NCBI GenBank assembly: GCA_002269645.1
Contig: NIVC01002081.1
Coordinates: forward strand, 124,001 to 188,000
Direction: 5' to 3'
Length of the DNA: 64,000 nt
From: Macrostomum lignano
Taxonomy: Eukaryota
In this document: positions 3,693 through 3,999 of the stretch, one piece after another
Layout of the letters: each line of letters opens with the position of its first letter
Numbering within the stretch: the stretch's first letter is position 1
Notes under the pieces: generated by a model
Databases searched by the model: none
Told to the model about the DNA's origin: nothing
What the model saw: only the letters and a program-made list of their open reading frames with translations
Position numbers and translations under genes: made by a program

Positions 3693-3999
3693 ATGCTCAA
3701 ACTGCTGGTCTGCCTATTGGCGATGGCCTCCATCAGCTGCTGCCAGGAAATTCACCGTACAAAGGCAAATTTCTCTATTGCGGTTCGGCGCGAACCGGCA
3801 TGATCCGCTGGCTCTGCGGGGCAATCAAACACCTGGAGAGCTCGGTATCAAGGATGGCTACCTCGATCCGTCTAGAGGATACGTGCCGCTAGACGCTCCT
3901 CCGCCTTGGAAGAAGAGGTCTGTTCGGCAGATTCACAGAACCCTCTTTTTTGAGCTGCCGGCGAAAATTCGATGCCAGAGTGCTCTGTAGGGGCACTGA
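3693..3999 (+). pseudogene. Divergent insulin-like peptide paralogue, frameshifted as assembled (pseudogene or homopolymer sequencing errors)
   Basis: Signal MLKLLVCLLAMASISCCQ; B chain YCGSARTGMIRWLC (C-X11-C); WKKR; A-like LSCRRKFDARVLCRG. Four 1-nt frame breaks, at ~3750, ~3842, ~3950 and ~3992, all in or next to short homopolymer runs. Clear homology to 11118-11498. Confidence 0.75.

What the first reader, a model, noticed from the sequence alone, without database searches (positions are those of the whole stretch)
3693..3999. ILP paralogue that lost exactly the intra-A-chain disulfide pair and the C-peptide
Seen: correcting four single-base indels, all in or next to homopolymer runs (AAA, TT, T6, G4), gives MLKLLVCLLAMASISCCQENSPYKGKFLYCGSARTGMIRWLC...WKKRSVRQIHRTLFLSCRRKFDARVLCRGH*. 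Against LCCRRLCDARVFCKGY, the first Cys of CC became Ser and the third Cys became Phe. Both inter-chain Cys and both B-chain Cys are kept. The ~21-aa segment between SVR and the A chain, including the RR site, is deleted in frame. Established: those two Cys are A6 and A11, which pair with each other, and C. elegans alpha-type insulins likewise lack this bond, with aromatic residues substituting. Inference: paired loss points to a once- or still-functional two-disulfide ILP, and the frameshifts may be long-read errors.
Basis: partly seen in the sequence, partly recalled or inferred. Interest (0 to 1): 0.78.

Follow-up and report, generated by a model that had tools for sequence, protein, structure and literature searches.

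The report
Four-cysteine paralogue of flatworm insulin-like genes
The broken-looking gene copy is a real, fast-evolving paralogue of a tandemly repeated, insulin-like secreted-peptide gene of the flatworm Macrostomum lignano; a sister contig carries it as an intact reading frame, so the frameshifts are probably assembly errors, but neither its function nor the family's insulin identity is shown.

Summary
The window is Macrostomum lignano Mlig_3_7 contig NIVC01002081.1. Copy C (3693-3999) is a diverged paralogue of two identical 126-aa genes (A 11118-11498, B 16081-16461).

A syntenic copy C' on contig NIVC01002732.1 has extra bases at all four sites and is an intact 103-codon ORF. In C' the deletions relative to A total 6 and 63 nt, both in frame. 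C and C' differ by many small indels and almost no substitutions. The assembly is PacBio/Canu with one Pilon round, in a genome of three roughly 2%-diverged subgenomes. I read the window's frameshifts as probable consensus errors (about 70%), otherwise a very young null homeologue.

The Cys changes are real: TGC>AGC and TGY>TTC at the first and third A-domain Cys, with the other four Cys kept.

Function is unresolved. dN/dS on the C-type branch is about 0.9 (family background 0.17), and no gene model or predicted protein exists for it. ORF integrity is unlikely under neutrality (P about 0.004-0.03).

Insulin membership is unproven. There is no Pfam or PDB hit, the A-domain spacing is CCx3Cx5C rather than x8, and AlphaFold pLDDT is 42.

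The parts
3030..3692 (+). Upstream region of copy C, homologous (about 88%) to the upstream region of the A-type units. It includes the invariant TATA-like block CATTTATATAAC at 3657-3668, about 25 nt before the ATG.
3693..3999 (+). Copy C coding region, the C-type paralogue. In this contig it is broken by four small deletions relative to sister copy C' and to A/B.
3747..3748 (+). Deletion site 1. The window lacks the C that C' and A/B have (CAGG[C]AAA). With it, the gap against A is 6 nt, in frame.
3840..3841 (+). Deletion site 2. The window lacks one base (GAGAG[C]CTCGG in C'; AGCTTCGG in A).
3945..3946 (+). Deletion site 3. The window lacks AT (CTC[AT]TTTTTT). With it, the large gap against A is 63 nt, in frame.
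3993..3994 (+). Deletion site 4. The window lacks C (GGGG[C]CACTGA). With it, the frame ends RGH-stop at the ancestral stop codon.
3779..3817 (+). B-domain-like Cys pair, retained: TGC 3779-3781 and TGC 3815-3817, spacing C-x11-C, with the first in an LYCG motif.
3953..3988 (+). A-domain-like segment S-C-RRK-F-DARVL-C. AGC 3953-3955 (Ser) and TTC 3968-3970 (Phe) replace the first and third Cys. TGC 3956-3958 and TGT 3986-3988 are retained.
4218..4908 (.). 20-bp satellite array (AGTGGTGCTAATCTGGAGGG) that separates gene units. It continues at 9377-9969 after the retrotransposon insertion, and recurs at 13703-14931.
4908..9376 (-). LTR retrotransposon inserted into the satellite between copy C and copy A. 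It is absent from the sister contig.
11118..11498 (+). Copy A, an intact 126-aa A-type gene (P0001).
16081..16461 (+). Copy B, an intact 126-aa A-type gene identical in protein to copy A.

Best explanation
Shown:
- Copy C is the first unit of a tandem array of a Macrostomum-specific secreted-peptide gene family. Each unit is promoter, single-exon CDS, then a 20-bp satellite.
- A-type precursors have a signal peptide, a B-like domain (LYCG-x10-C), a conserved extension ending in KKR, and a variable segment closed by RR or KR. This is followed by a C-terminal GI...CCx3Cx5C domain.
- The arrangement resembles an insulin-type prohormone.
- The C-type paralogue split from the A type well before the subgenome split (dS about 0.28 against about 0.02).
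- It lost 6 + 63 nt in frame, including the second dibasic site. It also replaced the first and third A-domain Cys with Ser and Phe, keeping four Cys.
- An intact 103-codon version lies at the syntenic position on contig NIVC01002732.1.

Inferred:
- The four small deletions that break the window copy are most likely uncorrected PacBio consensus errors (about 70%). Otherwise they mark a very recent null homeologue.
- If expressed, the product would be a secreted peptide with two disulfides corresponding to B7-A7 and B19-A20. It would be cleaved at most once, at KKR or RSVR, with no excised connecting peptide.
- Its history looks like a burst of relaxed or adaptive change after duplication, followed by retention of the ORF.
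- Whether it signals is unknown. I put the chance that it is a functional gene at about one half.
For: - Identity and synteny: P0001 is encoded on two Mlig_3_7 contigs, arranged C then A x2 in the window and C' then A x5 on NIVC01002732.1.
- Intact C' ORF.
- The window copy is derived at three of the four sites, because A/B share the extra base with C'.
- Difference spectrum, C against C': the CDS (307 bp) has 1 point substitution, 1 complex event and 4 deletions. The 1036 bp upstream has 29 substitutions and 7 indels. The excess of small indels in 3747-4217 has P about 5e-5, and the deficit of substitutions in the CDS has P about 0.009.
- Assembly method: Canu on PacBio CLR, then one Pilon round (PMC5730564). 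The genome holds three roughly 2%-diverged subgenomes and 93% of read pairs multi-map (PMC10733133), which hampers short-read polishing.
- ORF preservation: P(no stop codon) under neutral substitution is 0.13-0.25. All deletions relative to A are multiples of 3, whereas only 1 of 6 flanking indels is. Combined P is about 0.004-0.03.
- Family under selection: A against D-type (P0002) has dN/dS 0.17. The seven A-type CDS differ only by synonymous changes.
- Prohormone-like pattern: the B and A domains are nearly identical between the A type and P0002, while the segment between the dibasic sites cannot be aligned.
- The TATA-like block and the ATG are conserved in C.
- A6-A11 is the most dispensable insulin disulfide (PMC8514764).
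Against: - dN/dS on the C-type branch is about 0.9 (28.8 nonsynonymous, 9.2 synonymous). That matches the neutral expectation.
- No gene is called at C or C', and no predicted protein matches it among 5.8 billion sequences. There is therefore no sign of a transcript.
- The same contig shows no frameshift in 3.9 kb of retrotransposon gag-pol, none in two A-type CDS, and no single-base indel between the two LTRs. An error explanation needs a very local polishing failure.
- The paired Cys loss is only weakly informative (P about 0.2 given two losses).
- Insulin homology is unproven: no Pfam or PDB hit, hhalign probability 5.7%, AlphaFold pLDDT 42, and no Foldseek hit.
Confidence: 0.5

Rival explanations
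1. The C type is a decaying, non-functional duplicate in every subgenome. C' is still an open frame only by chance, and the loss of two Cys that happen to pair in insulin is a coincidence of roughly 30% amino-acid turnover.
For: - Branch dN/dS is about 0.9, significantly above the family background.
- The CDS is more diverged from A (18%) than the upstream flank is (11.7%).
- There is no gene model or predicted protein.
- About 1.8 of 6 Cys are expected to change under neutrality.
- Proline and glycine substitutions fall inside the predicted B helix (PASPV to SGEPG).
Against: - The ORF is stop-free and all deletions are in frame. Combined neutral P is about 0.004-0.03.
- C and C' show almost no point substitutions in the CDS against 2.8% in the upstream flank.
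- The TATA-like block, ATG, stop position, KKRSVR site and four Cys are retained.
Confidence: 0.3
2. The window's four deletions are real. This subgenome's copy is a freshly inactivated homeologue, while C' on the other subgenome remains the working gene. This would be ordinary gene loss after polyploidy.
For: - M. lignano carries three recently diverged subgenomes (PMC10733133).
- The same contig is otherwise free of frameshifts in 3.9 kb of TE coding sequence and in two A-type genes.
- Only two of the four deletions shorten a run (CC to C); a third removes a lone C and the fourth removes AT.
Against: - Four frameshifting deletions with zero derived point substitutions in 307 bp is an implausible mutation spectrum. 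About 3-4 substitutions per lineage are expected from the flank, and the flank's indel-to-substitution ratio is 0.24.
- All single-base indels in the CDS and upstream flank involve G or C. From my own knowledge, that is typical of residual PacBio consensus error.
Confidence: 0.25
3. The family is not an insulin-superfamily member but an unrelated lineage-specific secreted cysteine-rich protein. The 'A6-A11' assignment and the two-disulfide ILP reading would then have no basis.
For: - No Pfam Insulin hit, even for a B+A fusion, while a human proinsulin control scores 3e-31.
- A full HMMER scan of 1.84 billion representatives finds no relative outside M. lignano.
- The last A-domain spacing is 5, not 8.
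- The B-like domain has a 32-residue conserved extension unknown in insulins.
- AlphaFold and Foldseek are uninformative.
Against: - The framework is C-x11-C ... CC-x3-C-...-C, with YCG as in bombyxin.
- The A domain starts with GI straight after a dibasic site.
- The variable segment is flanked by dibasic sites while its neighbours are conserved.
- hhalign aligns RRGI..CCxxxCxxxx[F/L] to the insulin A chain (P = 0.0067).
- The low-confidence model has three helices in B, A1, A2 order.
Confidence: 0.35

Closest known systems
Insulin/IGF/relaxin superfamily prohormones (Pfam PF00049, PROSITE PS00262), e.g. bombyxin and flatworm ILPs such as Schistosoma ILP
   Same: - Signal peptide.
- B-like domain with xYCG and C-x11-C.
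- A variable connecting segment flanked by dibasic sites.
- A C-terminal domain that starts with GI and carries CC-x3-C-[D]-x3-[F].
- Six Cys in the order C-C-CC-C-C.
   Different: - The last spacing is x5, not x8. Schistosome ILPs keep x8 (PMC5391603).
- There is no profile match.
- There is a long conserved extension after the second B Cys.
- The genes are amplified as identical tandem copies.
- The C type lacks two of the six Cys and the second dibasic site.
C. elegans alpha-type insulin-like peptides (ins-20 to -30, -33 to -36)
   Same: They lack the A6-A11 cystine and have hydrophobic or aromatic residues at those positions (my own knowledge of Duret 1998 and Pierce 2001). They also belong to a large lineage-specific tandem expansion.
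   Different: Alpha-type peptides still have six Cys (PMC3493385), because an extra interchain bond compensates. The C type has four Cys and nothing extra. Only one of its two replacements is aromatic (Phe; the other is Ser).
Engineered insulin and proinsulin analogues lacking A6-A11 (pairwise Ser or Ala substitution)
   Same: The same pair is removed. Such analogues still fold and leave the ER, unlike analogues that lack A7-B7 or A20-B19 (PMC8514764).
   Different: Those are laboratory constructs with reduced stability and activity. Here the loss is natural and comes with about 30% sequence change elsewhere.
Young duplicate-gene pseudogenes, or homeologue loss after polyploidy
   Same: The branch dN/dS is near 1, the window copy carries frameshifts, and there is no gene model.
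   Different: The syntenic copy is an intact ORF with only in-frame deletions. The frameshifts have an error-like spectrum.

Membership tests
Insulin/IGF/relaxin superfamily | Significant match to the Pfam PF00049 Insulin profile (or PF03488 Ins_beta) | tested here: not met
   No Insulin hit at E<=10 for the full-length A type, P0002, or B+A fusions of the A and C types. The human proinsulin control scores 3e-31.
Insulin/IGF/relaxin superfamily | B-chain motif: L/Y-C-G followed by C-x11-C | tested here: met
   FLYCG-PASPVMIDWL-C in the A type and FLYCG-SGEPGMIRWL-C in the C type.
Insulin/IGF/relaxin superfamily | A-chain signature C-C-x3-C-[STDNEKPI]-x3-[LIVMFS]-x3-C (PS00262, pattern recalled from memory) | tested here: not met
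   The A type is CC-RRL-C-D-ARV-F-C. It matches up to the hydrophobic position, but the last Cys comes three residues early (x5 instead of x8). The C type is SC-RRK-F-D-ARV-L-C.
Insulin/IGF/relaxin superfamily | Prohormone layout: signal peptide and a poorly conserved connecting peptide bounded by basic cleavage sites | tested here: met
   Between the A type and P0002, the B and A domains are nearly identical and the KKR...RR/KR segment cannot be aligned. The C type keeps KKR/RSVR but lacks the second site. Cleavage itself is inferred.
Insulin/IGF/relaxin superfamily | Three-helix insulin fold with B7-A7, B19-A20 and A6-A11 cystines | tested here: inconclusive
   Two AlphaFold2 runs gave pLDDT 42. 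One shows helices in B, A1, A2 order. Foldseek against the PDB gave 0 hits. phmmer against the PDB found no insulin. hhalign gave an A-chain local match only, P = 0.0067, probability 5.7%.
Insulin/IGF/relaxin superfamily | Signals through an insulin-receptor tyrosine kinase or a relaxin-type GPCR | not testable with these tools
   Needs binding or genetic assays.
C. elegans alpha-type ILPs | A6-A11 absent, with an additional interchain disulfide, so that six Cys remain | tested here: not met
   The mature part of the C type has four Cys. Alpha-type peptides have six (PMC3493385).
Pseudogene | Disabling frameshifts or stops that are truly present in the genome | tested here: inconclusive
   The window copy has four frameshifts and the syntenic C' has none. 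The difference spectrum favours assembly error. No reads were available.
Pseudogene | Neutral substitution pattern (dN/dS about 1) | tested here: met
   On the C-type branch, 28.8 nonsynonymous and 9.2 synonymous changes over 219 and 63 sites give omega of about 0.9. However, ORF integrity has P about 0.004-0.03 under neutrality.
Pseudogene | No transcription | not testable with these tools
   The only indirect evidence is that no gene is called at C or C' in the record and no matching predicted protein exists.

The most novel reading that the evidence does not exclude
Macrostomum carries a lineage-specific, tandemly amplified branch of the insulin superfamily with a shortened A chain (CCx3Cx5C). 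Its first-in-array paralogue would be a functional natural ILP with only the two interchain disulfides. It would have no compensating bond and no excisable C-peptide, and would be either single-chain or cleaved once.
Probability: 0.22. Interest if true: 0.65.

Novelty: new variant of a known kind. Interest (0 to 1): 0.4.

Why it matters
If the family is insulin-like and the C type is expressed, it would be a natural experiment on how little covalent scaffolding an insulin fold needs. It would have two interchain cystines, a shortened second A helix and no connecting peptide.

It would also add an unannotated peptide-hormone family to a regeneration and reproduction model flatworm.

There is a practical point too. 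Apparent pseudogenes in the Mlig_3_7 assembly can be local polishing failures, and the paralogous subgenome contigs offer an internal check.

Tried and rejected
- Pfam on full-length and fused B+A constructs gave no Insulin hit.
- phmmer against PDB sequences gave only a chance 17-residue match to a vasopressin receptor.
- A full HMMER scan of 1.84 billion representatives found only P0002 and a repetitive false positive, P0004.
- A word-indexed search with the C' protein found nobody's prediction of it.
- AlphaFold2 with a 3-sequence alignment, with and without the signal peptide, gave pLDDT 42 both times. Foldseek against the PDB gave 0 hits both times.
- Literature searches for Macrostomum ILPs and for locus tag Mlig028676 found nothing.
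- Pierce 2001 could not be read.
- I considered an inhibitor-cystine-knot reading of the C-C-CC-C-C framework. I rejected it because the second loop is about 68 residues long, variable and bounded by dibasic sites.
- I considered using the retrotransposon's broken pol as evidence of assembly indels. I rejected this because the breaks are in-frame stop codons, not frameshifts.

Full report
**Origin and layout**

The 126-aa protein of copies A (11118-11498) and B (16081-16461) is encoded on two contigs of the Macrostomum lignano Mlig_3_7 assembly (GCA_002269645.1).
- NIVC01002081.1 holds two copies 4963 bp apart, as in the window.
- NIVC01002732.1 holds five tandem copies.

Each unit consists of about 640 bp of conserved upstream sequence, a single-exon CDS, a 3' region, and an array of the 20-bp satellite AGTGGTGCTAATCTGGAGGG.

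It is C at window 3693-3999 and C' at L002:1613-1924.

In the window, a 4.5-kb LTR retrotransposon (4908-9376, minus strand) has inserted into the satellite between C and A.

**Checking the observation**

Aligned to A and B, copy C has gaps of 7, 1, 65 and 1 nt. All are frame-breaking, and the protein similarity runs through three frames.

The decisive new fact is that the syntenic copy C' carries extra bases at exactly those four sites: C after 3747, C after 3840, AT after 3945 and C after 3993. C' is an uninterrupted 103-codon ORF. With those bases, the gaps relative to A become 6 and 63 nt, both in frame.

At three of the four sites A and B share the extra base with C', so the window copy is the derived state.

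The Cys statement holds at the codon level:
- TGC>AGC (Ser, 3953-3955) at the first Cys of the CC pair.
- TGY>TTC (Phe, 3968-3970) at the third A-domain Cys.
- The two B-domain Cys (3779-3781, 3815-3817) and the second and fourth A-domain Cys (3956-3958, 3986-3988) are kept.

The 21 missing codons remove the second dibasic site, but their placement is ambiguous. One 63-nt gap, 60+3, or 45+18 (which would pair QINRRGI with QIHRTLI) all align about equally well.

**Are the window's frameshifts real?**

I compared window 2657-4217 with the sister contig.

| Region | Length | Point substitutions | Indel events |
|---|---|---|---|
| Upstream | 1036 bp | 29 | 7 |
| CDS | 307 bp | 1 (plus one complex 6-nt event) | 4 deletions, all in the window |
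| Downstream | 218 bp | 4 | 7 |

- Small indels are about five-fold enriched in 3747-4217 (P about 5e-5).
- Substitutions in the CDS are depleted (P about 0.009 if the complex event counts as one).
- The window copy has no derived point substitution. The one point difference, TGC>GGC in the signal peptide, is derived in C'.

A real pseudogene allele would be expected to show several substitutions and at most about one indel.

The assembly was made with Canu from PacBio CLR reads and polished once with Pilon (PMC5730564). The genome holds three subgenomes about 2% apart, and 93% of short-read pairs multi-map (PMC10733133). Both conditions leave local consensus indels uncorrected.

Against this, the same contig shows none of the following:
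- frameshifts in 3.9 kb of retrotransposon gag-pol, which has only two in-frame stops;
- frameshifts in either A-type CDS;
- single-base indels between the two LTRs.

I put about 70% on assembly error and about 25% on a very young null homeologue. Either way, an intact gene copy exists in the genome.

**Selection**

Nei-Gojobori estimates:

| Comparison | dN/dS | dS |
|---|---|---|
| A vs the older paralogue P0002 (D type) | 0.17 | 1.06 |
| A vs C' | 0.69 | 0.28 |

With P0002 as outgroup, the C-type branch carries 28.8 nonsynonymous and 9.2 synonymous changes, giving omega of about 0.9. The A branch gives 0.36. The seven A-type CDS differ only synonymously.

Other evidence points the other way:
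- Neutral simulation gives P(no stop) = 0.13-0.25 for the observed divergence.
- The 2-3 deletions relative to A are all multiples of three, whereas only one of six indels in the homologous upstream flank is. The combined P is about 0.004-0.03.
- The CDS is nearly identical between the two subgenome copies, while the flank differs by 2.8%.

A burst of relaxed or adaptive change after duplication, followed by retention, fits both observations. A lucky pseudogene is not excluded.

No gene model is called at C or C', and no predicted protein matches it. Expression is therefore unsupported.

**Is the family insulin-like?**

In favour:
- A signal peptide.
- FLYCG followed by C-x11-C.
- A segment between KKR and RR/KR that cannot be aligned between the A type and P0002, although the flanking domains are nearly identical.
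- A C-terminal domain that starts with GI straight after the dibasic site, with CC-x3-C-D-x3-F.
- hhalign aligns this domain to the insulin A chain (P = 0.0067, probability 5.7%).

Against:
- No Pfam Insulin hit, even for B+A fusions, while the proinsulin control scores 3e-31.
- No PDB sequence hit.
- No relatives outside M. lignano in 1.84 billion representatives.
- The last Cys comes three residues early (x5, not x8). Schistosome ILPs keep x8 (PMC5391603).
- A 32-residue conserved extension follows the second B Cys.
- AlphaFold2 gave pLDDT 42 twice, and Foldseek found nothing.

I rate true superfamily membership at about 60-65%. The layout resembles an insulin-type prohormone, but membership is not demonstrated. 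The A6-A11 label is therefore an analogy.

**The paired Cys loss**

About 30% of residues were replaced on this branch, so about 1.8 of 6 Cys are expected to change. Given two losses, a bonded pair arises by chance with P = 3/15, and this particular pair with P = 1/15. That gives a modest Bayes factor of 5-15 for constraint, not proof.

It does agree with published work that A6-A11 is the one cystine not critical for native folding and ER exit of proinsulin (PMC8514764).

The C. elegans alpha-type analogy is partial. Those peptides keep six Cys (PMC3493385), while the C type has four and no compensating bond.

**Likely working, if it is functional (inferred)**

The product would be secreted with two interchain-type disulfides. 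It would be cleaved at most once, at the retained KKR or RSVR site, with no connecting peptide excised. That would give either a two-chain peptide whose A chain starts at or near QIHR, or an uncleaved IGF-like single chain.

**Verdict**

Function and insulin identity remain open. Short-read k-mers, RNA-seq and orthologues would settle the matter.

Noticed in passing
window 4908-9376 (minus strand): Young LTR retrotransposon. The LTRs (4908-5128 and 9150-9376) differ by 2 substitutions and one 6-bp GA-repeat indel. Pfam finds RT, RNase H and integrase domains. The gag-pol frame is continuous over 5223-9137 except for two in-frame stops (TAA near 7581, TAG near 7149). The element is inserted into the 20-bp satellite and is absent from the sister contig.
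   Followed up: partly
window 1781-2656: An 876-bp insertion relative to NIVC01002732.1. It carries an RNase H ORF (2236-2697, minus strand) and a Cys/His-rich ORF. It is probably the 3' fragment of a non-LTR retrotransposon.
   Followed up: partly
window 4218-4908, 9377-9969, 13703-14931: Arrays of a 20-bp satellite (AGTGGTGCTAATCTGGAGGG) separate every gene unit of the tandem array on both contigs.
   Followed up: partly
window 11118-11498 and 16081-16461; L001, L003 (NIVC01002732.1): Seven A-type copies on two contigs encode identical 126-aa proteins. Their CDS differ by up to 5 substitutions, all synonymous, and by no indels. This suggests strong purifying selection, gene conversion, or both, in a dosage-amplified secreted-peptide gene.
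   Followed up: partly
L008:10001-10869 and L009:10001-10869 (NIVC01000075.1, NIVC01003242.1): The older paralogue P0002 (BOX15_Mlig028676g4, 143 aa, with one intron in the signal-peptide region) has B-like and A-like domains nearly identical to the A type. Its connecting segment cannot be aligned to the A type's (dS about 1.06, dN/dS 0.17).
   Followed up: partly
window 1226-1443: An (AGAC)n microsatellite of about 54 units. It produces long spurious ORFs on both strands.
   Followed up: no
window 3789-3794 vs L002:1709-1716: A complex difference inside the B-like domain (CGGCGCGAACC against CGGGCGAACCC). This is a -1/+1 indel pair that changes ART to GEP. It cannot be polarised with the A type, and could be a second consensus artefact in either contig.
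   Followed up: partly
window 34627-34734: A short stretch 80% similar to the region downstream of the A-type units (12307-12424). It is probably a dispersed repeat.
   Followed up: no
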